Below, piece after piece: positions 32,801 through 49,023 of a DNA stretch of 64,000 nt. The position numbers and the translations under genes were made by a program. The DNA lies in the NCBI GenBank assembly GCA_002269645.1, contig NIVC01001367.1:124001-188000 (forward strand). The letters run 5' to 3'. This DNA comes from Macrostomum lignano. Its lineage: Eukaryota. The stretch's first letter is position 1, and every line of letters starts with the position of its first letter. The notes under the pieces were generated by a model, which was not told the origin of the DNA, ran no database searches, and saw only the letters and a list, made by a program, of their open reading frames with translations.

Positions 32801-35800
32801 GAGAGAGAGAGGGGGAGGGGGGCAGCGCGGAGACGCGGCCAAATTTCGGTGCCTCCACAGTTTTGGCAGACGCGCTGAGAGTTGCCCCCGCCTTGCCGAC
32901 CGAAAGTTGGTCCGGAATCGATTTTGCCGGGGGGGGGGGTTCGAACAGGACCCGGAGGGCGGCGGCGCTGAGGAGCGTACACGCCACTTACACTGGTCTC
33001 TGGCTCTTCAAGCGCTGCGGGGAGGGTCGGGAGAGAGCGCGGGGGCAGGGCAGCCACAAGCAGACAGGGCGCAGCAGTTCCGGTCCCACTGCAGCCAACA
33101 AAACAGAAATTCCGCTTTTATAACCCGCTTAACAATCCTCTGATTTCACCGCTGAGCTGCCTGTCATTTGGACCTGGCTGCCAGGAGCTGCGCCCTGCTC
33201 ATTTCATTAGGCTGGGCAGCGGTGGGCGCCCTGGCCGCTGCAGCCGCAGAAATCAAATTAAACTTGTCGGCGGCTTGCGACTCCCGGCTGGAGATAAACG
33301 GCCCAGCCGGGGGGAGGGGGGGACTCGAGCGCCTCTTCCAATAATTGATCGATTTTTTCAGCTCCACTCGGAATCCTCGCAGTGACTGACAGGCGGACTG
33401 GGCTGAGCTGATTGAGCTGTGGGGGGAGCGTATTGCTGCTCCAGCACTTTCTTCTCCAGGGGTGTCGCTGCGTCTGTAAACAGAACTCGGTTATTGGGAG
33501 GCTGGGGCAGCCTCATGTGATCCCAGGCCACTGGTGCCCGCCTCATCTCTGCCCGGTCTGGCTGCAAAGCCTCTCTTGTTATTGTTGGGGCTTTGCAGCA
33601 GCTTCTTCATCCTGCATTTTGTCCGCTGCGGCGCCCCGTCTCTGACCTGCCGACTCTCACGCTGTCCTTCTGACTCTCACTCTGTCCTTCTGACTCTCAC
33701 TCTGTCCTTCTGACTCTCACTCTGTCCTTCTGACTCTCACTCTGTCCTTCTGACTCTCACTCTGTCCTACTGACTCTCACTCTGTCCTTCTGACTCTCAC
33801 TCTGTCCTTCTGACTCTCACTCTGTCCTTCTGACTCTCACTCTGTCCTTCTGACTCTCACTCTGTCCTTCTGACTCTCACTCTGTCCTTCTGACTCTCAC
33901 TCTGTCCTTCTGACTCTCACTCTGTCCTTCTGACTCTCACTCTGTCCTTCTGACTCTCACTCTGTCCTTCTGACTCTCACTCTGTCCTTCTGACTCTCAC
34001 TCTGTCCTTAAGACTCTCACTCTGTCCTTCTGACTCTCACTCTGTCCTTCTGACTCTCACTCTGTCCTTCTGACTCTCACTCTGTCCTTCTGACTCTCAC
34101 TCTGTCCTAACTGTCACTCTGTCCTTCTGACTCTCACTCTGTCCTAACTGTCACTCTGTCCTTCTGACTCTCACTCTGTCCTTCTGACTCTCACTCTGTC
34201 CTTCTGACTCTCACTCTGTCCTTCTGACTCTCACTCTGTCCTTCTGACTCTCACTCTGTCCTTCTGACTCTCACTCTGTCCTTCTGACTCTCACTCTGTC
34301 CTTCTGACTCTCACTCTGTCCTTCTGACTCTCACTCTGTCCTGATGTCTCTCCCTGGCTCTCTGACTCTCTCTTCCTGTCCCCTGACTCTCACTCTGTCC
34401 TGCTGTCTCTCCCTGCCTCTCTGACTCTCTCTCCCTGTACCTCTGACTCTTTGACTCTGTCCCGCTGTCTCTCCCTGTCCCTCTGACTCTCTCACTCTGT
34501 CCCGCTGTCTCTCCCTGCCTCTCCCTCTCTGGCAGCCGCCAAGATTTACCAGGCGTGCGCTTTGCCCCTCCACCCGCAGCCCACCTGGACGCGGTGAAGA
34601 TCTACATGAACCTACGCAGGGTGCCGCAGAGTCTGCAGTCCAAGGTGATCCGCTGGTTCGACTACCTGTGGAGCTCCCACAAGACGGTGGACGAGGAGAA
34701 GATCCTGTCCCTGCTGCCGGACAAGCTCAAGGCCGAGATGGCCATCCACGTGCACCTGGACACGCTGAAGCAGGTGGAGATGTTCCAGAACACCGAGGAG
34801 GGCTTCCTGTCCGACCTGGTGCTCTGCCTGCGGCCCGTGCTGTTCTCACCTGGCGACTTCGTGTGCAGGAAAGGTGAGTTAATGGGCTGGGACTGTGCAG
34901 TCTGGGTCTCCGTCTGCTCAGGAGTGCATGCAGATGGCTGCATCAGTCTGACGGATTGAGCGGTTTCTCCCGTTTCTCGCTATGCTGGGCCGTGTCTCTC
35001 ATGTCTCACAGTGTCTCTCATGTCTCACAGTGTCTCTCATGTCTCACAGTGTCTCTCATGTCTCACAGTGTCTCTCATGTCTCAGTGTCCCTCATGTCTC
35101 ACAGTGTCTCTCATGTCTCATAATGTCTCTCATGTCTCACAGTGTCTCTCATGTCTCACAGTGTCTCTCAAGTCTCTCAATGTCTCTCATGTCTCACGGT
35201 GTCTCTCATGTCTCATAATGTCTCTCATGTCTCACAGTGTCTCTTATGTCTCACAGTGTCTCTCATGTCTCACAGTGTCTCTCATGTCTCACAGTGTCTC
35301 TCATGTCTCACAGTGTCTCTCATGTCTCACAGTGTCTCTCATGTCTCACAGTGTCTCTCACGTCTCACAATGTCTCTCATGTCTCAGGATCTCAAAACTA
35401 TTCCAGATGCTTCAGGTTTCACAGGTGTCACAGACTTCACAGGTGTCACAGGTGTCACAGATTTCATAGGTGTCTCAAGTGTCACAGGTGTCACAGGTGT
35501 CACAGGTGTCACAGACTTCACAGGTGTCACAGGTGTCACAGATTTCACAGGTGTCTCAAGTGTCACAGGTGTCACAGGTGTCACAGACTTCACAGGTGTC
35601 ACAGGTGTCACAGGTGTCACAGGTGTCACAGGTGTCACAGGTCGCAAGCCTCTCAGGACTCACAGACCCCGCCTGCCTCAGAAGTCGCACCTTCCCAGTT
35701 CGTCAATTTAAAAGGAAGCGACACCACCTGCCCAGACTTCCTCCAAGCATTCGAGCAGGAAATGAGCACAGGGCATCGCGCCAGGCCAATAAGACCCTCC

Positions 35801-38416
35801 TGCAGTTCTTGGCACGTGACGCCAGCTATTTTTATCGGAATTAAAAGAAGAAGCGGCGGCCGGCGAAGGAGCGCCCGGCCAGGGTGGGCCTTTCTGGATG
35901 CGCAGGCGGCTGGGGCAGGCGGTCGGTCTGTCGGGCGGGCGGGCACGTTCTGCAGGCAGCTCTGGGCGGAGCCGCAGCGGCCGGGCGATAAGCAGGGGGG
36001 ATTGCGCTGGCCAACTGACATTTTTGGCCGGGCGATAAGCCGGGACAGCGGATCTCAGACACCGGTGCTGCGGCAGGGTGAAGAATCGGATGGGGGGCAT
36101 CTAGAGGGCCGGCAGGCGAAGCGGCGGCCTGCACTTCACGGATTTGATTGTCAGTATTCCCCACCCCAATCGCAACCTGTTTACGTCGGTCAGTGTGGGA
36201 ATAGGAAGGCCGAGTCTTGGCGGGCAGCCTGCCCCAACTGCACTTGAATAGGGTTGGCGCAGCCTCGTCGGGGCTGGCAGATGCACTTTTAACTGGTAGA
36301 GACTTTCCGAGTTCCTGTTCGATGGCGGCTGAGATCTGCTGTGCTTACAGGCGAAGAGGCAGATTCAAGGAGCGGAGAGGCAGATTCAAGGAGCGGAGAG
36401 GCAGATTCAAGGAGCGGAGAGGCAGATTCAAGGAGCGGAGAGGCAGATTCAAGGAGCGGAGAGGCAGATTCAAGGAGTGGAGAGGCAGATTCAAGGAGCG
36501 GAGAGGCAGATTCAAGGAGCGGAGAGGCAGATTCAAGGAGCGGAGAGGCAGATTCAAGGAGCGGAGAGGCAGATTCAAGGAGTGGAGAGGCAGATTCAAG
36601 GAGCGGAGAGGCAGATTCAAGGAGCGGAGAGGCAGATTCAAGGAGCGGAGAGGCAGATTCGAGGAGCCATTGCATTGCACCGGAACCCTTCCCCACCCCC
36701 GCAGGCGAGGTGGGCAAGCACATGTACATCATCAGCCGCGGCAAGCTGCAGGTGGTGGCGGAGGACTGCAAGAAGGTGCTGGCCACACTGCGGCCCGGCA
36801 GTTACTTCGGCGAGCTGTCAATCCTCAACATGGGCACCATGGGCAACCGGCGCACGGCCTCGGTGAAGTCCGTGGGCTACTCTGACCTGTTCTGCCTGTC
36901 CAAGACCGACCTGTGGGACGTGCTGAAGGACTACCCGGCCGCCAGGGTGAAGCTGGAGGCCATCGCAGCCAAGCGACTGCAGGCCTTCAAGAAGAAGCCG
37001 ATTGAGGAAGGTGAGGCACTCAAGGCACCGGTGCTGGCGAAGGCTTCTTTCTGCTGCAGCTGCCGCGCCCAGATAGGCTGTGTTTATGTTGTGTTTAGAC
37101 TGTTTATGCTGCATATATTGTGTATTATACTATGTTTATGTTCTATTTATACTGCGGTTAGGTGCGTTTATTTTTTTAGGCTGTGTTTAGGCTGTGTTTA
37201 GGCTGTGTTTAGGCTGTGTTTACCCACTCGAGGCGTGATCGCTTGAGCAGCTGCGTCAGCAAATCCAGTTAGAGTCCCGGGAGAATTGAAAAGCAAAATT
37301 GGCCGGTCTTTGAGGCGCCTCGCTCAGTCAATCAGGGAGCAAAACTCGGCCAGGTTTTGTTGAGTCCCCGCGGACTCAGGTGAACTGCCTTCTGCAGCAG
37401 CGGCAGCAGGGGTGGGGGTTCATTAGCCAGTGGCGCCTTTGTTGGAGCCAGGGGAGTTCTCAAATTAATTTATTGCTCAGCCAGTGCAAAACGTGATGTT
37501 TGCGTGTGGAGAACTGCCGCTGACATAACTGCGGGCGGGATTCGAGCCCGTGTGGCCTGTTTGAAAGCGGAACTTAGGTAGGTATTCGCGATAGCCTACT
37601 GAAGAGTAGCAATGAAAGAGTTTGAAGCTGCTCGTAGTTTTCAAATTTCATGCAAAATGGTGAATCAAAAGTTTCTTGGCTTGGTGATGCCACAAGAGAG
37701 GAGATTTCAAAAACCGGAGGCGCCCTCCCGCAGCGAACCTGAACCGCAGCCAGAGCACCCCCGGCCTGGTGGAGTCCAGCGGCAAGGTGCCCATCGAGGT
37801 CATGACCTTGGCGGCCAGGGTCGGCGGCAGCGGCGTCGGTGGCTGCGGCGGCTGCGGCGCCAACCAGCTGCACTGCTCCAGCTTCGAGCTGCATCACAAC
37901 CAGCAGCACCGGGGCTCCATCGCCTGCGGCCTTCAGCAGCCGCAGCAGTCTGGGGCCGGCGAGGCGGCGAAACCCCCCGCTATGCCACCGCCGCCGCCGC
38001 CGCCGATGCCTCCCACGCAGCCAGCGCTGCTGCCACCGCCTCGGTTCTGCGTCGATCCGCCGACTCCAAGCGAGGCCGGCGGCAGCGGCGGCGGCGGCAG
38101 CAGCGGCGGCCTGCAGTGCGAGCTGAACCGCCTGAACCGGCGGCTGGCGCTGCTGGAGGCGGAGAACACCACCCTCAACCTGAAGCTCAACCACCAGCAG
38201 TGGCTGCTGGACCATCAGCTCCATCGGCTGTCGCCCAGAACCGAGGTGGAAGCGGAGGCCGCCTGCCCGCTGCACTGCGTCGTGTCCTCAGCTTCCGTGG
38301 CGGCGGCGGCGGCGGCTGCGGCGGCCGAGGACGACGCTGACTCGGAATCCTCCAGCAGCTCGAACTTCGAGCGGACACCCGCGGCGCCACCGGCCCCGCC
38401 GCCCAACAGGTTTTGA
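26808..38416 (+). CDS. Cyclic-nucleotide-gated cation channel, alpha-like, invertebrate subfamily
   Basis: Exons from 26808 (or ATG 27186) to 28338, then 34580-34873, 36705-37010 and 37734-38416, all joined in phase 1 by GT-AG. S1-S6 includes S4 [23 protein letters not shown] and S6 [15 protein letters not shown]. The C-linker reads [24 protein letters not shown] and the CNBD reads [22 protein letters not shown]-terminal coiled coil reads [26 protein letters not shown]. Confidence 0.93.
28357..28890. repeat. 21-bp then 20-bp related minisatellites at the start of CNG intron 1
   Basis: gtgtctgctgcagtcctgtgt, then ggggtgtctgctgcagtaaa. Confidence 0.92.
29503..29960. repeat. 28-bp minisatellite, about 16 copies
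   Basis: Unit gctgagatgccacagctcaaatgtagtt. Confidence 0.95.
31430..31725. repeat. Degenerate A-rich repeat of about 30 bp
   Basis: aaaagcagaagatagaaaagcaagcaagatac variants. Confidence 0.85.
32318..32508. repeat. 20-bp minisatellite
   Basis: Unit cagacccctgtgctaccggt / cgcatccctgtgctaccggt. Confidence 0.9.
33650..34345. repeat. 20-bp pyrimidine-rich minisatellite, with a degenerate tail to about 34530
   Basis: Unit tgactctcactctgtccttc. Confidence 0.96.
34995..35642. repeat. 19-bp (34995-35385) and 9-bp (35416-35642) minisatellites in CNG intron 2
   Basis: tgtctcacagtgtctctca; acaggtgtc. Confidence 0.93.
36355..36662. repeat. 21-bp minisatellite ending about 40 nt before CNG exon 3
   Basis: Unit gcggagaggcagattcaagga; open in frame with the exon. 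Confidence 0.95.
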
Positions 38417-38749: not shown

Positions 38750-39035
38750 GCCAGATGAGAGTGGAAAGGAGATGGAATGAGGGAGAGAAGAGATGAGATA
38801 AAAGGTAAAAGAGAAATGAGGAGATTAGTTGAAAGGAGAGAGGAGATAGATGAGAGGGATGAGATTAGATGAGAGGAGATGAGATGAGAGGAGAGATGAG
38901 ATGAGATGAGATGAGAGGAGAGATGAGATGAGATGAGAGATGAGAGAGGAGATGAGAGAGAGATGAGATGAGATGAGAGAGAGATGAGATGAGATAAGAG
39001 ATGAGAGGAGATGAGAGATGAGAGGAGAGAGATGC
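38750..39035. repeat. (GAGAT)n-like low-complexity tract
   Basis: Purine-rich gagat/gagag runs. Confidence 0.88.
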
Positions 39036-39422
39036 GATGATGATCAACTTTCAATCAAGCTGAGGCCTTCATACTGTACGTAGTCAACACCAGTTGTTCC
39101 AGTCCTCGAAGACACACAAAGGCTTATTCAGCTCCTCCGGCTCCATCAAGTCAATGCACAACTCAACTTAACACCATAGGAAAGAAATTAATGCCTATAA
39201 ATAAACATTATAACAAAGGCAATTTTCCGATCCAAATTTCAGCAAAAAAGCTCCACCATCAGCTGGATGTTTTGTTTATTTGCAGAGCTCAACTGAGCAA
39301 ACAACAGAAATTTAACTATCGACTGCTTTAACAAAAAGATGGAAATGAAATGCCTTCTATCAATTCTTTAAATGCCAATTCATAAGCACACAAGTTGAGT
39401 TCAGCTCAGCCGCCTGTGGTTT

Positions 39423-39623
39423 TCATTTGCTCCCGGGCTCCTTGTATAGTTCGTTGTTGGGGTTAAGCTGATTCGAATGGTTGTCGAGGTCAGCCTTGGT
39501 GCCCTTGCCTGAGTAGCCGCCCGTCTTCTGTTGCTGCTGCGCGTCATCGCCGCCTTTGGCCTGGCCGCCGGCCTGCGGCTTCGGCTGACTCGCTGACTGC
39601 TTGGCATCCTTATCCTTGTCCAT
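39423..39623 (-). CDS. 66-aa Gly/Gln/Lys-rich microprotein, paralog 1 (DLDNHxxQLNPNN motif), function unknown
   Basis: MDKDKDAKQSASQPKPQAGGQAKGGDDAQQQQKTGGYSGKGTKADLDNHSNQLNPNNELYKEPGSK*. It is GC3-rich, with acceptor cccgcag 5 nt before the ATG (exon starts 39628) and an upstream non-coding exon ending in donor GTAAGC at 40325. AATAAA lies in the 3' UTR near 39275. A conserved paralog is 2.1 kb away. Confidence 0.8.
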   Translation of the reverse strand: MDKDKDAKQSASQPKPQAGGQAKGGDDAQQQQKTGGYSGKGTKADLDNHSNQLNPNNELYKEPGSK

Positions 39624-39661
39624 TGAGACTGCGGGTACGGGTGGATCAGGTGAGTTATGAG

Positions 39662-40150
39662 ATGGCTGCTCACTGCCAGCATGACTGCAGCTGGCCAGTG
39701 CTTCATCACTATGCCTGCTCACTGCTCAATAGCATGACTGCAACTGGCCAATGCTTCATCACTATGGCTGCTCACTGCTCAATAGCATGACTGCAGCTGG
39801 CCAATGCTTCATCACTATGGCTGCTCACTGCTCAATAGCATGACTGCAGCTGGCTAGTGCTTCATCACTATGGCTGCTCACTGCTCAATAGCATGACTGC
39901 AGCTGGCCAGTGCTTCATCACTATGGCTGCTCACTGCTCAATAGCATGACTGCAGCTGGCCAATGCTTCATCACTATGGCTGCTCACTGCTCAATAGCAT
40001 GACTGCAGCTGGCCAGTGCTTCATCACTATGGCTGCTCACTGCTCAATAGCATGACTGCAGCTGGCCAGTGCTTCATCACTATGGCTGCTCACTGCTCAA
40101 TAGCATGACTGCAGCTGGCCAATGCTTCATCACTATGGCTGCTCACTGCT
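39662..40150. repeat. 53-bp minisatellite, about 9 copies, in the 5' UTR intron of microprotein 1
   Basis: Unit tcactatggctgctcactgctcaatagcatgactgcagctggcca(g/a)tgcttca. Confidence 0.95.
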
Positions 40151-40489
40151 TTATTGTTAGCATGAGTGCAGCCAATGCTTATAGTATACTCATTTGCAAA
40201 GCCTACTATTTCAATATTCAAGATCAAGTGCCCGTGTGTGCAGTCACAGTGGCAATTATGCTTCAAAAACTAATATATTGAAGTAGTTACTCCTAGCCAA
40301 GAGTAAGAGCAAGTTATGTGCTTACCTTAAAACTGAAGCGATGGATATAAATGTGCAGCTAGTCTGAGTGGTCCAATTGCAGGAGACCAAGAATGAATCC
40401 AAAGCTCTTAATTGATTGATTATCAAACAGTTCGGCAGCTTCAGGTGAAATTGAAATCCGTTTAATCCGCAGCCACCCATAGGGCCTCC

Positions 40490-40552
40490 ATTTAAATAGA
40501 TGGTGAAATCGAAAAACGAAAAACGAAAAACGAAAAGCGAAAAGCGAAAAGT
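40490..40552 (-). promoter_or_regulatory. Promoter of microprotein 1: six CGAAAAR heptamers (ISRE/IRF-E-like) and a TATTTAAA box
   Basis: (cgaaaaa)3(cgaaaag)3 at 40510-40551 and atttaaata at 40490-40498 (TATTTAAAT on the minus strand), 11 nt apart. The arrangement is conserved in paralog 2. Confidence 0.6.
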
Positions 40553-41509
40553 GCAAGATGTCTTTTTGGCGATTGTTGTCTGCCTGATTTTAGCAGTCTC
40601 AAACGCAATTTTGCTAGCAATAAACTCCTGCACAGCGAGTGCAACTCAAATGACGTTGCAAAATACATGCTGAAAAACTGTTTTACTGAACTGCTGACGG
40701 AATTATCAGCAATATGATCGTTCCGCGATTAATCGTGAATTATTGCTTCAATTAAATATCATTTATTTTCAGCATCTTTTGTCTTTTTCTGTCTTTTTAA
40801 TGATTTATAAACTAACGTATAATAAAGGAGACTGCATTGAACTACTCTTCACGGGCATTTGTTGCAGAATATGATCAGACATATTTTATTGGCATCGGGA
40901 GTGCCATGTACTTTAGCCTCACCTCCCCCCTGAGATCCTCTCGGGTCCCTGATAGTAAGGCATGTTCAAGAGTCTATTCACTTCACTGCTCAAAATGCAG
41001 TTCAGTTAATTTTCTCGAATGCGAGTGGAATCTCTAAATAATGCACATATGCAGACATGAGCGCGTGTTTGACTTTAGCGCCGTACGTTTCTGGTATGCT
41101 TTGTGCTCACATGAGGAATTTTTATGCTCCAGACCTCAAGGCCTGCAGTTTACTGATTATTCTAACCAATTATTATTTACATTATTTCAGTTACAAATAA
41201 CCAGAATGAGCTGCTAGTCTTCCCTGATTTTCTCCATGCATTCCTAAAAACGGTTTTTTATTTTTAGATGCCATGCGACCTCTTGGCGAAGGCTTTGGTT
41301 GCCATGAAGCAAGTTTCCAATCGATATTACAGCAAAAACAGCTTCATCAGCTGGATGCTTTGTTTATTTTTAAAGCTCAACTAAAGCAGAAACGGAAACT
41401 TAATCGCAAATGCTTTGAACAAAAAGATGGAAATAAAATGCTTTCTGTCACACTTGCTCAAAATGCCAATTCATAAGCACAGAGTGAGTTCATCTCCCGC
41501 CTGCGGTTC

Positions 41510-41701
41510 TCAATTGCTCTGAGGCCCCTTGAACCGCCAGTTGTTGGGGTTGAGCTGCTTGGCGTGGTTGTCCAAGTCGGCCTTGTCGCCCTTGCCTGAG
41601 TAGCCGCCCGTCTGCTGCTGCTGCTGCCCGTCATCGCCGCCTTTGGCCTGGCCGCCGGCCTGCGGCTTCGGGTTCGCCTGCTGCTTGGCCGTCTTGTCCA
41701 T
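41510..41701 (-). CDS. 63-aa microprotein, paralog 2 (DLDNHxxQLNPNN motif), function unknown
   Basis: MDKTAKQQANPKPQAGGQAKGGDDGQQQQQTGGYSGKGDKADLDNHAKQLNPNNWRFKGPQSN*. The acceptor is ccccgcag with a CTAAC branch point (exon starts 41708), and the 5' UTR intron donor is GTGAGA at 41957. The architecture is the same as paralog 1. Confidence 0.8.
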   Translation of the reverse strand: MDKTAKQQANPKPQAGGQAKGGDDGQQQQQTGGYSGKGDKADLDNHAKQLNPNNWRFKGPQSN

Positions 41702-42117
41702 TGAGAGACTGCGGGGTGCGGGCGGATCGAGTTAGTGATGATGATGACATGGCTGCTCATGCTTAGCATGGCTGCAGCTGGCCAATGCTTCATCACTATG
41801 GCGGCTCACTAAGCCTACTGTTTAATATACTAAGTCTCAGTGTGCGCAGTCCCAAATGCTTGGCTATTACATGATTCTCGAAAATAGAATATGTAAATAG
41901 GTACTGGTACGAGGATACAGGTAGCCAATAACTGAGAGAGTTATTAAATATTCTCACCTTATACAATGAAGCGTTGCAAAATGTCAGATAGTCTGAGCGG
42001 TCCAGTGACAGGAAACCAAAAATTATTTGAGAGGCTTTCAACTGATTGATTATCAAACAGTTCGGCAGCTCCAACAGGTGAATTAAATGTCTCAGCCGCC
42101 TCCGGGGCCGCGCCTCC

Positions 42118-42166
42118 ATTTAAATATATGGTCGAATCGAAAAACGAAAAACGAAAAGCGAAAAGT
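42118..42166 (-). promoter_or_regulatory. Promoter of microprotein 2: four CGAAAAR heptamers and a TATTTAAA box
   Basis: (cgaaaaa)2(cgaaaag)2 at 42138-42165 and atttaaata at 42118-42126, with the same 11-nt spacing as paralog 1. Confidence 0.6.
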
Positions 42167-42802
42167 TCAAGATGTCCTTTCAGCGACTGTCGGCTCCCTG
42201 AGCATGCAGTCTCGAGCTCAATTTTGCTAGCATTAAACTCCAAATTAATTAATGAAAGTGCTGTAAGTTTACTCAGAACTCTGTTTTACTGACTTATTGA
42301 CGGAATTATCGCCATCATTCTAATTGCAAAGGTCAGAGGAGGTGAGTCCTTAATATTGTATGCAATACATATTACACAATACATACGAAGCTCTTCTCAG
42401 CATCTTTTGGCTTTATACTCTGTCATATTTTAACTTGATCAGGTGACGAATTTCTATAGTTGCTAACGTGTGAAATGCTCTTATCTTAGCGTGCATCTCT
42501 TATAGATTATGACAAAATTATTCATAGCCCATTATTTCCCCCAAAGAAATCCCCTATCTCTAAATCTTCGAAAACTATAATTTTACTTGCCGCTTAAGTG
42601 CATGTTCAAGAGCCTACACAGTACGCACTGCTCAAAATTCTGTTCACATGATTTAAGTGGAATTTCCAAATGCACTGGGCAGAAAAGCGTACGTGTAGTG
42701 GCACATTCCTTCGGATTATCTCGTAAGCATGCCGAGCTCAGACTCAGCACGCTGAGCTCAACATTGCTGAACAACAACTAGAGTTCAAAACAAAAAGCTT
42801 CA

Positions 42803-43081
42803 CTAGATAGATAGATAAACAAATAAATAGATAGATAGATAGATAGATATAGATAGATAGGTAGATAGGTAGGTAGCTAGATAGGTTAGATAGATAGATA
42901 GGTAGGTAGAAAGGTAGATAGATAGATAGGTAGCTAGATAGGTTAGATAGATAGATAGGTAGGTAGGTAGAAAGGTAGATAGATAGGTAGGTAGCTAGAT
43001 AGGTTAGATAGATAGATAGGTAGGTAGAAAGGTAGATAGATAGATATAGATAGATAGACGGATCGATGGAAAGATAGGTAA

Positions 43082-43117
<36 letters not shown>

Positions 43118-43223
43118 GTAGGTAGGTAGGTAGATAGATAGATAGATAGATAGATAGGTAGGTAGGTAGATAGATAGATAGATAGATATAGATAGATAGA
43201 CGGATCGATGGAAAGATAGGTAA

Positions 43224-43259
<36 letters not shown>

Positions 43260-43430
43260 GTAGGTAGGTAGGTAGATAGATAGATAGATAGATAGATAGG
43301 TAGGTAGGTAGATAGATAGATAGATAGAAAGATAGGTAGATAGATAGATAGATAGATAGATAGGTAGGTAGATAGATAGATAGATAGAAAGATAGGTAGA
43401 TAGATAAATGGAAAAAGATAGATAGATAGA
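42803..43430. repeat. (GATA)n/(GGTA)n microsatellite
   Basis: GATA runs with a duplicated interruption gacggatcgatggaaagataggtaaat. Confidence 0.96.
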
Positions 43431-43609: not shown

Positions 43610-44164
43610 ATTTCGGTAGAAGGATTCGGTAGATGAATTCAGTAGAAGGATTCGGTAGATGAATTCGGTAGAAGGATTCGGTAGAAGGATTCGGTAGATG
43701 GATTCGGTAGAAGGATTCGGTAGATGGATTCGGTAGAAGGATTCGGTAGATGAATTCAGTAGAAGGATTCGGTAGATGAATTCGGTAGAAGGATTCGGTA
43801 GAAGGATTCGGTAGATGGATTCGGTAGAAGGATTCGGTAGAAGGATTCGGTAGTAGGATTCGGTAGAAGGATTCGGTAGATGGATTCGGTAGAAGGATTC
43901 GGTAGATGAATTCAGTAGATGGATTCGGTAGATGAATTCAGTAGATGGATTCGGTAGATGGATTCGGTGGATGGATTCGGTAGATGGATTCGGTAGATGG
44001 ATTCGGTAGAAGGATTCGGTAGATGGATTCGGTAGAAGGATTCGGTAGAAGGATTCGGTAGTAGGATTCGGTAGAAGGATTCGGTAGATGGATTCGGTAG
44101 AAGGATTCGGTAGATGGATTCGGTAGATGGATTCGGCAGAAGGATTCGGTAGATGGATTCGGTG
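43610..44164. repeat. 13-bp minisatellite
   Basis: Unit ga(a/t)ggattcggta. Confidence 0.95.
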
Positions 44165-44668: not shown

Positions 44669-47600
44669 CTACAGGCCGCCGCCGAGCGAGATCTCGCTGA
44701 CGCTGTCGGCCTCATCCGGGCTGCTGCCGGCCACGGGGTCCAGGCCGGGCACGTTGACCGTCAGGCGGCGCGGCCCGGTGGTGCCCAGGCTGGCCGAGTC
44801 CGCGGTGGCAGCGAAGGCGTCCTGGATGGCCTGGTTGGTGCTGAGCAGGTTGGTGGCGGTGCTGCTCAGGCCCAGGTAGGCGTCCGGGTCCACGTCCGGC
44901 CGGTCCGTGGCCTCGGTGGAGAACTCGGCCGTGCTGGCCATTGCGGTGCGGTCGTCGGCGGCGGCGCTGTCCCGCAGCTGCAGGGACTCGCGCTGGGCGG
45001 GCGGCGACTGGCTCGGCCGGAGCGGCTCGCTCGGCTCGCTGGTTCGGGCGGCCGCGGACGATGACGAGGGTGGCGGAGGAGGCCGCGACGGCACCGGGGC
45101 CGGCGGTGGCGGCGGAGAAGGCGGCGGCAACTCAGCGTCATCGTCATCGTCGCCGATGATGTCGGTGACGTCGTCACCGTTGTCGGGGCCGCCTGGCTCA
45201 GAGAGGGACGAGCCGGCTGAGCTGTCGGCGAAGTCCGCGGCGGCGGCGGCTGCAGCGGCGGCGGCGTCGGAGCGATGGCGCCGGCCAGGAGGGGGCGGGT
45301 AGAGCGGGCGCCCGTCGCTGCCAGCGATGACGGCCAGCACGGGATCACGGCGGGGGTCGGCCCGGTGCGACGGCGCCCGGCGCGGAAATTCGCCCTCGCT
45401 GCGGGTGGGCGGGTCGGCCAGAGACTGGTCGGCGGTGAGATCGAAGGCGGCCTCGCCGTTGCTGGCGTCCAGCTGGCCGAGCAGCTGGCGAGCTTCGGTG
45501 GCAACCTGGATGTTCGGCGCCTGACCCTCGCTGCGGTCCAGCAGCCAGACGCCCTCGGAGATGCTGTCCGCGCAGGTCGGCGTGGCGGGTGACGACGGTG
45601 TCGAGGGCGTGGCCGAGGGCGGCACCTCGGGGACAGCAGACTGCGGCGGCGAGCCGGGTATCGGCAGAGTCGTCTGCGCCTCGACATCCACGGCTGTCTG
45701 GGAGACAGCGTCCTGTAGGGTCTGGCAGCCCATGTCCATCCGAGACGACTGGGCGATCGGTTGCGGCTGGGGCGGCGGGGTGGCCGCTGACGGCTCCTCC
45801 AGCGATGGCGTCGGGGTGCGCACAGAGTGACGCGACGGCAGGCTGACGATGTCCTGGTCGGGAAGTTGGCGTTCTTCTGCTGTTGATCCGCCGCTGAGCT
45901 CCGAATCCGGAGAGGCGGCCTGGGCTCGAGGCTGCGGCTGTGGCTGCGGAGGCGGGGGCGGTGCCGGCGGCTCCGGGCGCTGCTGCAGCAGCAGTTGCAA
46001 AGCCGACAGAGGCACGGAGGGCTCAGCAGCGGGCGCAGCAGGCGTCGGAGTTCGCTGAGTCGGCGTGGATTCGGTGGCCGTCTCCGGCTGCTCGTCATCG
46101 CGCGGGGTGGCTTCGGGCGTTGAAAAGGCGGCGCCGCCTGGCGGCTGTACGTCCCGACCGGCCAATCGGCGCGCGGCGCGTTCGACTCGGGCAAGCAGCG
46201 CGGAGAGAATCATGCGCCGGATCAGCGCGTCCAGGCCAGCCGAGTTCGCGCGCTCTGGAGGCGCACCTGACGGCCGCCTGCGCTGGTCGACCATGCGAGC
46301 GAGCACCTCGGCAAGGACTTCGTCGCGCATCCGGGAGCGCACGGCATCGGCGGTGCGGCCGGCGCGAACTCGACCGGCTGGCTGTGACGCCGCGGCCGCG
46401 TCCTCGGCGGAGGGACGGCGACGCGATGGGCCTGTTGGAGGCGCTGGCCGGCGAGGCGGCGGCCGGTGATAGCCAGGAAGCCGGACGCCTGCGCCCTCAA
46501 CCGAGGCGCCGTCCTCGTCGTCGCCGTCGTTCCCGTCGTCACGGCGATCATCCCGGGGCGGCGATCCCGCCTGCACGGCTTCCTCGCGAGTTTGCGGCGG
46601 CTTCGGCTCCCGCCTCTTTGGCACGGCGCTGGTCGGTGCGGCGCGCCGGCGTGGCGGCTCCTCAGCCGGCTGACGGGGCAGGGCGGTGATGGGGCCTTTC
46701 ACATCATTGGCAAAGTGCATGTACGGCATGCGCTGCCAGGGCCCCAGCTTGCGGCGCTGACCGCCTGCTGGGGCGGCTTTCTGAGGCGAGCACAGTCGGG
46801 CCAGCTCTGACTCCGATACTGCGTCAAAAATTGCTCGAATCGGCAGAGGCGCCTCTTCGGGCGGCTGCTGCACTCGCGTTCTTCTGGCGCCGGGCACCGC
46901 TCGCTGACGGATGGCGCCGCCGTGCTTGATGACGTCATCGACAATGGCGCGAACCCGGGCCCTCTGCGCGGCCGCCTCGTCCTGCCAGATGGCGTCAACG
47001 ATGCTGTAGATCAGCTTGCCATCGCGGCTTCGCTCGGCTGTCTGGGCGCGCGTCTCCAGCGCCTTCTGGCGGCGTCGAACCTCCAGCAGGGTGCGCTGCG
47101 CCGCCGCCACCGAGTCCTCTGGCTTGTGGCTGCCGGCCGCCTCCTGTTGGCGCCGCTCCGCCTCCAGCACGCTGTCATAGGATGGATAAACGCTGCGGTC
47201 AGGCAGCGGGTCGCGGCGCAGGTACTCGTTCAGCGGATAGGAGCGGCGCTTCTTCTCTGGCGCCGCCGCCGCGCCGGCGCCGCCGCTGCCAGCCCCGTTG
47301 ATCTCGAAGCGGGACAGGCCGGAGAGGCTCACGGCGGGCGTTGAGCGATCAGCGGGCGGCTCAATGGCGGACATCGCAGGCGAGGACTGGTACTGCGGCA
47401 GCATGGACGTCGGGCGGGAATGCCCCGCGCTGGTGGTCGGGCGGGACTGCCCCGCGCTGGTCGTAGCCGTGGCCTCGGCCGGCGGCATGGCCTGGTAGCG
47501 GTCTTTGTGCGCCCGGATGTCGGAGCGAATGCTGTCGATCTCGTTAAGCAGGCGGGCCACGCCGCCGCCGAGCTCGCTGTCACCGCGGCGGACGATCGCA

Positions 47601-49023
47601 CGCACCTCGTCACGAATGTCCGACACGACTTGGGCGGCGCGATCGACGCTCGGTGGCTGCGGCTCCGCCGGCTGTGGGCCCGGAGACTTGCGCGTCGACT
47701 CGCCTGCCGGGCGGCGCTGCGGCCCGGTGGACGACGCCCGCTCGTCGACCAGCTGGCGCAAAAACTGCTGCTGGTGTTGCGTGGGAGGCGGGGGCGGCGG
47801 AGGCCCCGGCATCACAGGCACCATCGGCATTCGGTGCTGCTGCATGAGCAGCTCCTGCTGCATCCGCAACTGCTCCCGCTGCAGCTGCTCCAGCTGGCTC
47901 AGCCGGTCTGCCAGCAGGCGGTCCAGCTGCTCCCGCAGGCGGCGCTCTTCCTCCTGCTTCGGCTGCTGCCCACCTGCCGAGACAGCCCGCTCCGCCTCCA
48001 GCCGTTCGAGCCTCTCCAGCAGGCGGCCGATGTTCGCCTCAACCTGCTGCTGCCCGCGGATCAGCGGCTCTGCCATGGCCACCGCGGCAGTCGCGGCCGC
48101 CGTAGCCGCCACCTGCTGCGGCTGCTGTTGAGGTGGCAGGACCCTCGGTGGACGACTCGGCCACCGGAGCCGCCGCCGCCGCCGCCAACTTTTCGGCTGG
48201 CCAGGAGGCGGCGACAATCAGCGACATCGCCGGCCGAGGGCTGCGGCTGCTGCTGACGGGCCGCCGTCTCCCCGAACTCTCTGCCTTCATTCTCGGCCTC
48301 CTCATCATTGCCAAGGCGCTGAGGTGGAGACTCGCAGGCAGCTCCCTGCCGGAGACCGCTGCCACCTTGCCGGAGCGTCATGGTGGCGATGCCTTCGTCA
48401 GCCAGCTCGATGTCGCCCGATGCGACTGCCGCGGCGTTTTCGGTGACGCCGTCCATGACGTCATCCACAGTCCGGGCGGGAACGTCAACAACGTCGGAGA
48501 AGACGGCGCCGGGGACCGGCCGCTTCCACACCAGCTTGTCAGGAATGCGGCCGCTGCTCCGCAGCTCGCCCGCAGCAGCCGAGCCGGCCAGCTGGTGCGC
48601 CGCCTCTGTGGGCAGCAGGTAGAACTGATCGTCCAGAGTTGTCGAGCCCTGCGACGCCCGGACGTCGACAGCAGAAGCGGCCTGCTGGTCGCTGTCCTTC
48701 TCCTGCTGCTGCCAGGACGCGTCCCAGCGACTCCGCAGGGCCTCCTCGCTTTCGGGCGGCGCGCGGCCCGCGCTGCCCAACGCGGAGTCGACAGCCCGCT
48801 GAGTGGCTCGAAGGACCCGGTCAGCGGCTGAGGCTTCGCTGGCTGCGGAGGCGCCTGCCGGCTGCTGCTGCGCCTTCAGGCGGGTGAGCTCGGCGCTGCC
48901 GTTCAAGCTGAGCATAGGCGCGCCGCTGGAGCCGGTGGGTGGGGGAGGGCTCTGCATTGATTCCCGATAGAATTCGGACTGCTCCCGCCCAGACTGCTTC
49001 TGCACTACTTGAAGTCCAGCCAT
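44669..49023 (-). CDS. KIAA0586: TALPID3/KIAA0586 centriolar ciliogenesis protein; two long ORFs (49023-about 48145 and about 48145-44669) with a frame break
   Basis: VAATAAATAAVAMAEPLIRGQQQVEANIGRLLERL matches the TALPID3 [30 protein letters not shown] block as recalled. RDGKLIYSIVDAIWQDEAAAQRARVRAIVDDVI matches KDGAAMYSLINAL...RIRKTVDEWI. The C-terminus has SISEG/SEGQ motifs, and coiled coils are present. Confidence 0.8.

What the first reader, a model, noticed from the sequence alone, without database searches (positions are those of the whole stretch)
39190..42720. Tandem pair of unannotated-looking microprotein genes with a conserved GGYSGKGxKADLDNHxxQLNPNN core
Seen: two minus-strand genes of 66 and 63 aa, 2.1 kb apart, with the same architecture (TATA, non-coding exon, intron, ATG 5-7 nt into exon 2). 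The core PKPQAGGQAKGGDDxQQQQxTGGYSGKGxKADLDNHxxQLNPNN is almost identical while introns, UTRs and protein ends have clearly diverged, which suggests purifying selection on the peptide. There is no signal peptide, TM segment or Cys. From memory and unverified, DNH(A/S)NQLNPNN-type motifs occur in small uncharacterised proteins of other invertebrates and microbes. Inference: with the ISRE-like promoters, this may be an inducible innate-immune or stress microprotein module, the best candidate for an undescribed system in this window.
Basis: partly seen in the sequence, partly recalled or inferred. Interest (0 to 1): 0.8.

Follow-up and report, generated by a model that had tools for sequence, protein, structure and literature searches.

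The report
Flatworm copies of unnamed ancient microprotein
The two small genes are real, selectively constrained paralogs in the flatworm Macrostomum lignano, and they belong to a large, unnamed, unstudied family of tiny disordered proteins whose 13-residue core (DLDNHxNQLNPNN) is nearly identical in animals, protists, bacteria and archaea; function is unknown and the proposed interferon-type immune link is weak.

Summary
The observation mostly holds. The window is M. lignano contig NIVC01001367.1. Two minus-strand genes (63 aa, CDS 41701-41510; 66 aa, CDS 39623-39423) lie 2,078 nt apart. Both have a TATA box, a GT-AG 5'UTR intron, an ATG 7 or 5 nt into exon 2, and AATAAA.

The peptide is under purifying selection. 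Paralog dN/dS is 0.39 (0.28 in the core). Between homeologs of gene B the core has 5-6 synonymous and 0 non-synonymous changes. At nucleotide level, however, the CDS (86%) is no better conserved than the aligned non-coding DNA (80-90%).

The motif defines a large family: at least 1,722 proteins in one search, and 474 clusters in an exhaustive HMMER scan. Members occur in sponge, bivalves, sea slug, annelid, crickets, Euglena, a dinoflagellate and at least 115 prokaryote loci. Every source name is "hypothetical". Pfam, NCBIfam, PHROGs, PADLOC, the PDB and the searchable literature have nothing.

AlphaFold2 predicts disorder with one short helix per motif. The window proteins meet the hydrophilin criteria.

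The ISRE-like element is a variable 7-bp repeat found only at this pair. Older M. lignano paralogs and the oyster orthologs examined lack it.

Best reading: divergent one-repeat members of an undescribed hydrophilin-like, motif-bearing microprotein family. An immune role is not supported.

The parts
41510..41701 (-). Gene A coding sequence, 63 aa plus stop: MDKTAKQQANPKPQAGGQAKGGDDGQQQQQTGGYSGKGDKADLDNHAKQLNPNNWRFKGPQSN
   Evidence: ORF list and tblastn. Identical protein in homeolog L001. Family membership.
41709..41957 (-). Gene A 5'UTR intron (249 nt, GT..AG). It holds one copy of the unit that forms the 53-bp minisatellite in gene B (about 41810-41749).
   Evidence: Donor TATAAG|GTGAGA and acceptor CCGCAG|TCTCTCAATG located. 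Repeat relation. Inferred from sequence only; no RNA evidence.
41958..42095 (-). Gene A non-coding exon 1. The start is approximate, placed about 30 nt downstream of the TATA box. It contains the invariant 28-nt block AGCTGCCGAACTGTTTGATAATCAATCA at 42043-42070.
   Evidence: Six-copy alignment. The block occurs only twice in the window. The transcription start is inferred.
42116..42128 (-). Gene A TATA-like box TATATTTAAATGG
   Evidence: TATTTAAATGGAG is invariant in all six copies.
42138..42165 (-). Gene A heptamer run, 4 x TTTTCG(Y). On the + strand it reads CGAAAAACGAAAAACGAAAAGCGAAAAG. It supplies 4 IRF-type half-sites (AANNGAAA) but no exact GAAANNGAAA.
41363..41368 (-). Gene A polyadenylation signal AATAAA. 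Paralog homology ends about 55 nt further on, near 41309.
39423..39623 (-). Gene B coding sequence, 66 aa plus stop: MDKDKDAKQSASQPKPQAGGQAKGGDDAQQQQKTGGYSGKGTKADLDNHSNQLNPNNELYKEPGSK
   Evidence: exact product on NIVC01001367.1. 95% identical to BOX15_Mlig014947g1.
39629..40325 (-). Gene B 5'UTR intron (697 nt, GT..AG), containing a 53-bp minisatellite of 9.3 copies at 39662-40150
   Evidence: donor TTTAAG|GTAAGC, acceptor CCGCAG|TCTCAATG; Tandem Repeats Finder
40326..40467 (-). Gene B non-coding exon 1 (approximate start), with the same invariant 28-nt block at 40413-40440 and one exact ISRE core GAAATTGAAA (+ strand, 40447-40456)
40488..40500 (-). Gene B TATA-like box TCTATTTAAATGG
40505..40550 (-). 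Gene B heptamer run, 6 x TTTTCG(Y), 6.4 copies by Tandem Repeats Finder, plus an adjoining exact ISRE core GAAATCGAAA (+ strand, 40505-40514). It supplies 7 IRF-type half-sites.
39275..39280 (-). Gene B polyadenylation signal AATAAA. Paralog homology ends near 39219.

Best explanation
WHAT IT IS (shown). The two genes are tandem, lineage-specific paralogs in Macrostomum lignano. They belong to an ancient, unnamed family of 30-130-aa proteins built from one to three copies of a unit of about 25-30 aa: Y-[ST]-G-x-G-[TD]-K-A-D-L-D-N-H-[SA]-N-Q-[LCM]-N-P-N-[NH]-x-x-[YF]. Canonical animal members, including another M. lignano locus, have two units. The window pair keeps only the C-terminal unit, behind a low-complexity K/Q/G-rich N-terminus.

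HOW IT MOST LIKELY WORKS (inferred). The product is a cytosolic, intrinsically disordered, extremely hydrophilic protein of hydrophilin type. Its only ordered element is a short helix over K-A-D-L-D-N-H-x-N, capped by an N-P-N-N turn. I propose that it acts stoichiometrically through this motif. It would either bind a very widely conserved ligand or surface, or serve as a protective or chaperone-like solute under water, osmotic or temperature stress. It is neither an enzyme nor a secreted effector.

Expression is probably stimulus-dependent, from a TATA-type promoter carrying a (TTTTCGY)n repeat. That repeat is peculiar to this pair.
For: GENES AND SELECTION. The ORFs and gene signals are present in both copies and in four further copies on two other contigs. 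A versus B gives dN/dS 0.39 (Fisher p = 0.015) and 0.28 in the core (p = 0.03). Homeologs of gene B differ in the core by 5-6 synonymous and 0 non-synonymous changes. About 79% of core sites are non-synonymous, so the chance of that pattern is about 4e-4.

FAMILY. The first search gave 15 hits. The profile search gave at least 1,722 hits, all 'hypothetical'. An exhaustive HMMER scan of 1.84 billion representatives gave 474 clusters at E <= 1e-3. Named members come from Geodia, Pinctada, Mercenaria, Dreissena, Magallana, Elysia, Lamellibrachia, Gryllus, Euglena and Prorocentrum. A further 115 bacterial and archaeal loci encode stand-alone 27-90-aa versions.

TRUE EUKARYOTIC GENES. Pinctada has a splice acceptor 19 nt before its ATG. 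Mercenaria has an intron between the two units. Canonical M. lignano paralogs exist, and one has the same exon 1 / intron / ATG layout.

DISORDER WITH A MOTIF HELIX. AlphaFold2 on the window protein gives pLDDT 56.6 with a helix at residues 43-51. On a two-unit sponge protein it gives pLDDT 60 with helices at 13-22 and 43-52.

HYDROPHILIN CRITERIA. The criteria are Gly > 6% and hydrophilicity index > 1 (PMC11277543). The window proteins have Gly 13.6 / 15.9% and GRAVY -1.77 / -1.78. 91% of small eukaryote-type members also qualify.

PORTABLE MOTIF. The motif appears as a terminal appendage on PLAC8, tetraspanin-like and other proteins.
Against: There is no expression, translation or phenotype evidence for these two genes.

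Meeting the hydrophilin criteria is a statement about composition and says nothing direct about function. The prokaryotic members are Gly-poor (median 3.8%) and acidic, and only 23% of them meet the criteria. A bulk-protectant role therefore does not explain why exactly this 13-residue core is nearly invariant across all three domains. That pattern points more to a specific binding partner.

Prokaryotic gene neighbourhoods show no consistent partner and no stress-operon signature.

At nucleotide level the CDS is no better conserved than the flanking non-coding DNA. One of the six copies carries a frameshift.
Confidence: 0.4

Rival explanations
1. Specific-partner regulator. The DLDNHxNQLNPNN helix-turn is a short linear recognition motif for one macromolecule conserved in Bacteria, Archaea and Eukarya, for example a component of translation, transcription or proteostasis. 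On this view the microprotein is a regulator or inhibitor of that partner, perhaps in dormancy or stress. It would not be a generic protectant.
For: The 13-residue core is almost invariant from Nitrosopumilaceae and Flavobacteriia to flatworms and crickets, while everything around it varies: basic tails in animals, strongly acidic W/Y-rich tails in bacteria. The motif is the only predicted ordered element. It is used as a terminal appendage on unrelated membrane proteins.
Against: No partner is indicated by gene neighbourhood or by any library. There is no structural homolog. The idea is pure inference from the conservation pattern.
Confidence: 0.22
2. First reader's hypothesis. The pair are IRF/ISRE-driven, pathogen-inducible innate-immune effector microproteins.
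For: IRF-type half-sites (AANNGAAA) number 4 and 7 within about 150 nt of the two promoters, against 1.06 per kb in the window. Promoter B has 2 of the window's 4 exact GAAANNGAAA cores. The element abuts a TATA box and is kept, in at least 2 copies, in all six gene copies. M. lignano is listed among species with RIG-I-like receptors (PMC8476169). In the clam locus, a minisatellite with GAAAGTCGAAAC units lies 1.7 kb upstream of the gene.
Against: The repeat has 7-bp periodicity (3-nt spacing), whereas the ISRE has 6-bp periodicity. There is no full ISRE in either promoter and no exact core in promoter A. Copy number varies as in a microsatellite. The canonical M. lignano paralogs and the oyster upstream sequences lack the element. 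A clear IRF3 homolog was not found in planarians (PMC13563047). The proteins have no signal peptide and no cationic-amphipathic character. PADLOC and PHROGs give no hit. The family is present in free-living bacteria and archaea, which have no IRF system.
Confidence: 0.12
3. Decaying duplicates. The pair are redundant copies of the canonical two-repeat gene. They have lost repeat 1 and are drifting toward pseudogenes, with little or no function of their own.
For: Only one repeat remains, and the N-terminus is low-complexity. The CDS is no more conserved than non-coding flanks at nucleotide level. The upstream copy on contig NIVC01000020.1 has a +1 frameshift in an A-run. Intact canonical paralogs exist elsewhere in the genome.
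Against: The synonymous / non-synonymous pattern shows constraint on the remaining core. ORF, splice signals, TATA and AATAAA are intact in five of six copies. The frameshift sits in a homopolymer of a long-read assembly and may be a sequencing error.
Confidence: 0.1
4. Metal- or ion-binding peptide. The Asp/Asn/His-rich core, plus the extra His and Cys in repeat 1 of canonical members, chelates a metal ion, and the proteins buffer or deliver it.
For: There is an invariant His flanked by Asp and Asn. Canonical repeat 1 often reads DNH-x-NQC-NPNH-x5-H, giving a possible His3Cys set. The motif is fused to PLAC8 domains, a family that includes plant cadmium and zinc resistance proteins (established knowledge).
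Against: The window proteins and most bacterial members have a single His and no Cys. No match to any metal-binding family was found.
Confidence: 0.08

Closest known systems
Hydrophilins in the broad sense (for example yeast SIP18, STF2, Hsp12; plant LEA proteins)
   Same: Small, cytosolic and intrinsically disordered, with Gly > 6% and a hydrophilicity index > 1 (criteria from PMC11277543). Found in prokaryotes and eukaryotes. Genes often occur in tandem copies.
   Different: There is no sequence relationship to any named hydrophilin. Induction by water deficit, which is the biological hallmark, is untested. Prokaryotic members are Gly-poor.
LEA group 1 / Em proteins (Pfam PF00477 LEA_5) and bacterial GsiB
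   Same: Short hydrophilic proteins made of tandem copies of a conserved unit of about 20 aa, with members in plants, bacteria, archaea and some invertebrates. In that sense the architecture and the cross-domain distribution are alike (established knowledge).
   Different: The repeat sequence is different and there is no HMM match. The core here is Asn/Asp/His-rich with an Asn-Pro turn, whereas the LEA_5 motif is Gly/Arg/Glu-rich.
KGG-repeat stress proteins (Pfam PF10685; E. coli YciG, Neurospora Con-10)
   Same: A repeated motif of about 20 aa in 60-90-aa hydrophilic proteins shared by bacteria and eukaryotes (established knowledge).
   Different: No HMM match. The motif and the taxon range are different.
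Vertebrate and mollusc ISRE/IRF-driven interferon-stimulated genes
   Same: Short TATA-proximal arrays of GAAA elements. IRF half-sites AANNGAAA are enriched.
   Different: The periodicity is 7 bp where the ISRE has 6 bp. There is no full ISRE consensus. The element is absent from the other family loci examined. The trans-acting factor is uncertain in flatworms.
ArgC (N-acetyl-gamma-glutamyl-phosphate reductase) dimerisation domain, Pfam PF22698 positions about 27-58
   Same: A 29-residue local resemblance of the form G-x-S-G-x-G-x-K-A...N...N...Y. The best score is 26.2 bits against a curated cut-off of 27. It also hits TIGR01850 weakly.
   Different: The score is below threshold, the match covers 29 of 165 profile positions, and the window proteins score only 11.9 bits or nothing. 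This is treated as local resemblance and is not taken as evidence of membership.

Membership tests
Unnamed DLDNHxNQLNPNN-repeat microprotein family (defined here) | Core D-[LM]-D-N-H-[SA]-x-Q-[LCM]-N-P-N-[NH], preceded by Y-x-G-x-G-x-K-A | tested here: met
   Both window proteins carry GGYSGKG[DT]KADLDNH[AS][KN]QLNPNN. The phmmer E-value to family members goes down to 6e-15 outside M. lignano.
Unnamed DLDNHxNQLNPNN-repeat microprotein family | Two tandem units in canonical animal members | tested here: not met
   Only the C-terminal unit is present. BLASTP against the canonical M. lignano paralog aligns residues 33-54 only. The pair is therefore a one-unit variant, an arrangement otherwise common in prokaryotes.
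Unnamed DLDNHxNQLNPNN-repeat microprotein family | Small (about 30-130 aa), no signal peptide or TM segment, predicted disordered | tested here: met
   63 and 66 aa; maximum 15-aa hydropathy -1.2; AlphaFold2 pLDDT 56.6 with a single 9-residue helix.
Hydrophilins | Gly content > 6% | tested here: met
   13.6% and 15.9%. Criterion quoted from PMC11277543.
Hydrophilins | Mean hydrophilicity index > 1 | tested here: met
   GRAVY -1.77 and -1.78
Hydrophilins | Transcript or protein accumulates under water deficit or osmotic stress | not testable with these tools
   No expression data could be retrieved.
LEA_5 (PF00477) / KGG repeat (PF10685) | Match to the family HMM above the gathering threshold | tested here: not met
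   No hit even at E <= 10 for the window proteins, or at E <= 1 for nine relatives.
ISRE/IRF-regulated genes | ISRE consensus GAAANNGAAA(C/G)T in the promoter | tested here: not met
   Neither promoter has the full consensus. The exact 10-nt core is present twice in promoter B and is absent from promoter A. The repeat spacing is 3 nt.
ISRE/IRF-regulated genes | IRF half-sites AANNGAAA clustered near the transcription start | tested here: met
   4 (A) and 7 (B) within about 150 nt, against 1.06 per kb in the window.
ISRE/IRF-regulated genes | An IRF-family factor is present in the organism, and the gene is induced by an immune stimulus | not tested
   Only indirect literature is available: planarians have a diverged IRF3/4-like gene and no clear IRF3 homolog (PMC13563047). 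The IRF repertoire of M. lignano was not examined.
Antimicrobial peptides / secreted effectors | Signal peptide, cationic amphipathic or Cys-stabilised mature peptide | tested here: not met
   No hydrophobic N-terminus, no Cys, net charge +0.6 / +2.6, strongly hydrophilic throughout.
Anti-phage defence components (PADLOC) / phage proteins (PHROGs) | HMM match | tested here: not met
   No hits for ten representatives, apart from one match at E = 0.046 to a PHROG of unknown function. tblastn against 50,697 phage records found nothing.
ArgC dimerisation domain (PF22698) | HMM match above gathering threshold over the domain | tested here: not met
   Window protein B scores 11.9 bits against a cut-off of 27. 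The best relative scores 26.2 bits over 29 of 165 positions.

The most novel reading that the evidence does not exclude
The DLDNHxNQLNPNN unit is a universal recognition peptide for a partner conserved across all three domains of life. It has moved horizontally between hosts and symbionts: the 35-aa Nitrosopumilaceae, Cenarchaeum and Poribacteria version is almost identical to the animal repeat. In M. lignano, a one-unit derivative has been placed under a private GAAA-repeat (IRF-type) inducible promoter as a stress or immune effector. That would make it a new, pan-domain class of regulatory microprotein.
Probability: 0.12. Interest if true: 0.85.

Novelty: new variant of a known kind. Interest (0 to 1): 0.55.

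Why it matters
A 13-residue core that stays nearly invariant from marine archaea and Flavobacteriia to sponges, bivalves, crickets and flatworms has no Pfam or NCBIfam model, no solved structure and no mention in the searchable literature. That makes it a rare unclaimed conserved element among microproteins.

M. lignano offers transgenesis, RNAi and abundant RNA-seq data (established knowledge). It has both canonical two-unit genes and this divergent one-unit pair, so the family could be studied experimentally there. Working out what the motif binds or protects would annotate thousands of "hypothetical" small ORFs across all three domains.

For the window itself the finding is more modest: two paralogous small genes, correctly spotted, with no support for an immune role.

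Tried and rejected
LIBRARY SEARCHES.
- Pfam, NCBIfam, PHROGs and PADLOC scans of the window proteins and up to ten relatives gave no family.
- A PDB profile search gave 0 hits at E <= 10.
- Rfam on 36-46 kb gave nothing.
- The recurrent sub-threshold hit to ArgC (PF22698 / TIGR01850) was considered and rejected as membership. It covers 29 residues and is below the cut-off.

LITERATURE.
- Two searches for motif strings gave 0 papers.
- Searches for Mlig014947 and K1PVB4 gave 0 papers.

TRANSCRIPT EVIDENCE.
- Exact-sequence look-ups found only genome contigs.
- The oyster ortholog contigs could not be assigned to RNA or DNA with confidence, so they are not used as evidence.

PROKARYOTIC GENE NEIGHBOURHOODS (80 loci).
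- Only small, taxon-restricted clusters appeared: LytTR regulators, HTH-NYN proteins, an IS110 transposase, and unannotated HTH-like proteins downstream in Flavobacteriales.
- There was no common operon partner and no RiPP-type modifying enzyme. The RiPP-precursor idea was therefore dropped.

PHAGES AND PLASMIDS.
- tblastn found two plasmid copies annotated 'hypothetical' or unannotated, and no phage copy.

OTHER POINTS.
- Fold search was not run. Both AlphaFold2 models are low-confidence (pLDDT 57-60), so matches would be meaningless.
- The N-terminus as a decayed first repeat (QQANPKP versus NQCNPNN) is not supported by BLASTP and is kept only as a weak inference.
- The invariant 28-nt exon-1 block is about what chance allows at 85% background identity (my estimate is about 0.4 such runs expected). 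It is not claimed as functional.
- The comparison of CDS with non-coding identity between homeologs has no power.

Full report
1. WHAT IS IN THE SEQUENCE

The window is Macrostomum lignano DNA. The 66-aa product is encoded exactly on NIVC01001367.1 of assembly GCA_002269645.1. The region is 94-97% identical to a homeologous or allelic locus on NIVC01000694.1.

On the minus strand there are two ORFs:
- Gene A, 63 aa, 41701..41510.
- Gene B, 66 aa, 39623..39423.
- Their ATGs are 2,078 nt apart.

Both genes show the same layout:
- a run of TTTTCG(Y) heptamers;
- a TATA-like box 8-10 nt downstream of it (TATATTTAAATGG at 42128; TCTATTTAAATGG at 40500);
- an untranslated stretch of about 135-140 nt ending in AAG|GT (exon 1 ends at 41958 / 40326);
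- an intron of 249 or 697 nt ending in CCGCAG|;
- an ATG 7 or 5 nt into exon 2;
- an AATAAA about 140 nt after the stop codon (41368 / 39280).

The duplicated unit spans about 42654-41309 for A and about 41012-39219 for B.

The pair lies in a gap of roughly 5.5 kb. On one side are the last exons of a cyclic-nucleotide-binding ion-channel gene on the + strand. On the other is a 1,182-aa TALPID3-like ORF on the - strand. Long microsatellites bound the gap.

The exon-intron model rests on sequence signals and on their conservation in six copies. I could retrieve no RNA-derived contig for these peptides.

2. IS THE PEPTIDE UNDER SELECTION?

At nucleotide level this does not hold. The CDS is 86% identical between the paralogs. 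The aligned parts of promoter, exon 1, intron and 3'UTR are 80-90% identical. The non-coding regions differ mostly by indels and by a 53-bp minisatellite that expanded in the intron of gene B.

The codon-level tests do show constraint:
- A versus B gives dN/dS = 0.39 (Fisher p = 0.015), and 0.28 in the 44-residue core (p = 0.03).
- Between the three homeologous copies of gene B, the core carries 5-6 synonymous and no non-synonymous substitutions. The two amino-acid changes (K8N, G64Q) and one codon indel fall outside the motif.
- About 79% of core sites are non-synonymous, so five changes all being silent has a chance of about 4e-4.

One of the six copies, the upstream gene on NIVC01000020.1, has an extra A in an A-run that shifts the frame. 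This is either a pseudogene or a long-read homopolymer error.

The strongest evidence that the peptide matters is its conservation far outside flatworms, described next.

3. THE FAMILY

A single-sequence search returned 15 small proteins. Outside M. lignano, most of them have two copies of Y(S/T)GxGTKADLDNH(S/A)NQ(L/C)NPN(N/H)xxY.

Wider searches gave these numbers:
- A profile search found at least 1,722 proteins at E <= 0.01 among the 8,000 candidates scored.
- An exhaustive HMMER scan of 1.84 billion cluster representatives found 474 clusters at E <= 1e-3 and 133 at E <= 1e-10. Most are 40-140 aa.

Named sources are the sponge Geodia; the bivalves Pinctada, Mercenaria, Dreissena and Magallana; the sea slug Elysia; the tubeworm Lamellibrachia; two Gryllus crickets; Euglena; and the dinoflagellate Prorocentrum. 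Every name is 'hypothetical' or 'uncharacterized'.

These are genuine eukaryotic genes:
- The Pinctada gene has a splice acceptor 19 nt before its ATG, the same layout as in the window.
- The Mercenaria gene has an intron between the two units.
- Lamellibrachia has two family genes in tandem.

One scan of a genome per prokaryotic species found 115 loci. The ORFs are stand-alone microproteins of 27-90 aa:
- Nitrosopumilaceae, Cenarchaeum, a Poribacteria MAG and a Gemmatimonadetes MAG encode a 35-aa form, MGKYSGTGDKADLDNHSNQLNPNNEEYAG-acidic. It is almost the same as the animal unit.
- Flavobacteriia, Dehalococcoidia and many others encode xxADLDNH(A/S)NQLNPNNDAYWxSRGxDERPDDWE with acidic tails.

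4. POSITION OF THE WINDOW GENES IN THE FAMILY

M. lignano also has canonical two-unit genes. One example is Mlig011114g3, MSDKAASDNKSNQCNPNNERYAGHQPGYQGTGTKADLDNHATQLNPNNERYQ.... They form a tandem array of three next to the CRM1/exportin gene on two other contigs.

One of these (L095:1568) has the same architecture as the window genes: TATA box, non-coding exon 1, an intron containing a minisatellite, an ATG 10 nt after the acceptor, and a protein that starts MDK.

The window pair keeps only the C-terminal unit. BLASTP against the canonical paralog aligns residues 33-54 only. The pair are thus lineage-specific, divergent one-unit derivatives, with a K/Q/G-rich low-complexity segment in place of unit 1.

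5. IS IT A KNOWN FAMILY?

No.
- Pfam-A, NCBIfam, PHROGs and PADLOC give no family for the window proteins or for nine or ten diverse relatives.
- A profile search of all PDB sequences gives nothing at E <= 10.
- RefSeq calls a plasmid copy 'hypothetical protein'. No phage record carries the motif.
- Full-text searches for eleven motif strings and two gene identifiers return no paper.

The only recurrent signal is a sub-threshold match of 29 residues (G-x-S-G-x-G-x-K-A...N...N...Y) to the ArgC dimerisation domain. The best score is 26.2 bits against a cut-off of 27, and the window protein scores 11.9 bits. I treat it as a local resemblance.

6. WHAT THE PROTEIN LOOKS LIKE

AlphaFold2 with 91- and 107-sequence alignments predicts disorder:
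- mean pLDDT 56.6 and pTM 0.22 for the window protein;
- mean pLDDT 60.0 and pTM 0.36 for a two-unit sponge protein.

Each motif carries exactly one short helix: residues 43-51 (KADLDNHSN) in the window protein, and residues 13-22 and 43-52 in the two-unit protein. The models are too weak for a fold search.

The window proteins have 13.6% and 15.9% Gly, GRAVY of -1.77 and -1.78, no Cys, and no segment more hydrophobic than -1.2. They meet the two numerical criteria for hydrophilins, Gly > 6% and hydrophilicity index > 1 (PMC11277543). So do 91% of the small eukaryote-type members. Only 23% of the prokaryotic ones qualify, because those are Gly-poor and strongly acidic.

In a few larger proteins the motif is a terminal appendage. 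The partners are PLAC8 domains, a tetraspanin-like four-helix protein, a glycine-zipper-like domain and a possible nucleotidyltransferase-like domain. This fits a portable short motif.

Prokaryotic neighbourhoods give no common partner.

7. THE PROMOTER AND THE IMMUNE HYPOTHESIS

The heptamer run is specific to these two promoters: 6 overlapping matches in the window against 0 expected.

Read on the + strand it is (CGAAAAA/CGAAAAG)n. That gives GAAA every 7 bp, whereas an ISRE has GAAA every 6 bp. The counts are:
- IRF half-sites (AANNGAAA): 4 in promoter A and 7 in promoter B, within about 150 nt, against 1.06 per kb in the window.
- Exact ISRE core (GAAANNGAAA): only four in 64 kb. Two are in promoter B (40447, 40505) and none in promoter A.
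- Full ISRE consensus: absent from both promoters.

Other evidence also weighs against a functional ISRE:
- Copy number of the heptamer is 2, 4, 4, 4, 6 and 7 in the six M. lignano copies, which is microsatellite-like behaviour.
- The canonical M. lignano paralogs have no TTTTCG at all in 8 kb.
- The Pinctada and Magallana upstream sequences that I could read have nothing comparable.
- The Mercenaria locus has a 21-bp minisatellite with GAAAGTCGAAAC units 1.7 kb upstream. Its link to the gene is unknown.
- Planarians are reported to have a diverged IRF3/4-like gene and no clear IRF3 homolog (PMC13563047). M. lignano is only documented there and in PMC8476169 as having RIG-I-like receptors.

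The element may well be a cis-regulatory feature private to this pair. Calling it an ISRE, and inferring immunity from it, is not supported.

8. BEST EXPLANATION AND RIVALS

SHOWN. These are two real-looking, constrained, tandem paralogs of an ancient, unnamed, widely distributed microprotein family.

INFERRED.
- The product is a cytosolic, disordered, hydrophilin-type protein that acts through its single helix-turn motif.
- The closest functional analogues are the repeat-motif hydrophilins, LEA group 1 / GsiB and the KGG-repeat proteins YciG / Con-10. They share the architecture and the cross-domain spread but not the sequence.
- The main weakness of a generic-protectant reading is the near-invariance of one specific 13-residue core amid freely varying flanks. 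That pattern favours a specific conserved ligand or partner, so I rank that rival second and close.
- The immune-effector reading, the decaying-duplicate reading and a metal-binding reading remain possible but are less supported.

9. VERDICT

The interest lies less in this locus than in the family it exposes. That family is a pan-domain, unannotated motif, and it could be studied in a tractable flatworm.

Noticed in passing
L091-L094 (contigs carrying P0079): A two-unit family member is annotated in NCBI as a hypothetical protein of Salmonella Paratyphi A / Enterobacteriaceae. It sits on near-identical 785-818-nt contigs in at least 33 sample blocks. The contig is intronless and ends in AATAAA plus an A-run. 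It looks like a polyadenylated eukaryotic mRNA or cDNA that contaminates many unrelated assemblies and has been taxonomically mis-assigned.
   Followed up: partly
L002:4107-4317 (NIVC01000020.1): The upstream (A-type) copy has GGCCAAAAGGCG where the others have GGCCAAAGGCG, which shifts the frame. It also has a duplicated ANPKPQ. This is either a pseudogene or a long-read homopolymer error.
   Followed up: partly
window 39662-40150 (gene B intron); single unit in gene A intron at about 41810-41749: A 53-bp minisatellite (9.3 copies, 96% matches) has expanded inside the 5'UTR intron of gene B. Gene A has one unit. Homeolog L001 has more copies. A canonical paralog (L095) independently has a 26-bp minisatellite in the equivalent intron.
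   Followed up: partly
L007-L018 (Nitrosopumilaceae, Cenarchaeum, Poribacteria and Gemmatimonadetes MAGs): Archaeal and bacterial MAGs of lineages known as sponge symbionts encode a 35-aa protein, MGKYSGTGDKADLDNHSNQLNPNNEEYAG.... It is almost identical to the animal repeat unit, including the YSGTG part that other prokaryotic versions lack. Host-symbiont horizontal transfer is possible.
   Followed up: no
P0171, P0200, P0142, P0231, P0167, P0209, P0187, P0196: The motif is fused to other domains: PLAC8 (P0142, P0231), a tetraspanin-like domain (P0167), a Gly-zipper-like N-domain (P0209, P0187, P0196), and a C-terminal region with a nucleotidyltransferase-like signature GSRLKGTAISNSDWDY (P0171, P0200; no Pfam hit). 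Some of these may be gene-model artefacts.
   Followed up: partly
P0016, P0017, P0007, P0023 against PF22698 / TIGR01850: There is a recurrent near-threshold similarity of the unit (G-x-S-G-x-G-x-K-A...N...N...Y) to a 29-residue segment of the ArgC dimerisation domain. The best score is 26.2 bits against a cut-off of 27, at E = 8e-6.
   Followed up: partly
L088:3120-3330 (Mercenaria mercenaria): A minisatellite of about 21 bp with GAAAGTCGAAAC-type units (GAAA-NNN-GAAA, the same 3-nt spacing as in the flatworm heptamers) lies about 1.7 kb upstream of the clam family gene. Its relation to that gene's promoter is unknown.
   Followed up: no
window 42043-42070 and 40413-40440: The 28-nt block AGCTGCCGAACTGTTTGATAATCAATCA in exon 1 is invariant in all six gene copies and unique to them in the window. 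It is only marginally longer than chance allows at the local divergence.
   Followed up: partly
window 42804-43430, 43612-44163, 38821-39040: Large simple repeats bound the gene pair: (TAGA) x 158, a 13-mer x 42 (TTCGGTAGAAGGA), and (GAGAT)n arrays.
   Followed up: no
window 34555-38400 (+), 44669-48217 (-), 50058-51017 (-): Neighbouring genes are a cyclic-nucleotide-binding ion channel (Ion_trans plus cNMP_binding in the homeologs), a TALPID3-like 1,182-aa ORF, and an ORF resembling a class I alpha-mannosidase (glycosyl hydrolase 47; identified by eye, not by a search).
   Followed up: no
L095/L096 (NIVC01003302.1, NIVC01004449.1) and L089 (Lamellibrachia): Family genes occur in tandem arrays in other places too: three canonical copies next to CRM1/exportin in M. 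lignano, and two copies 4 kb apart in the tubeworm.
   Followed up: partly
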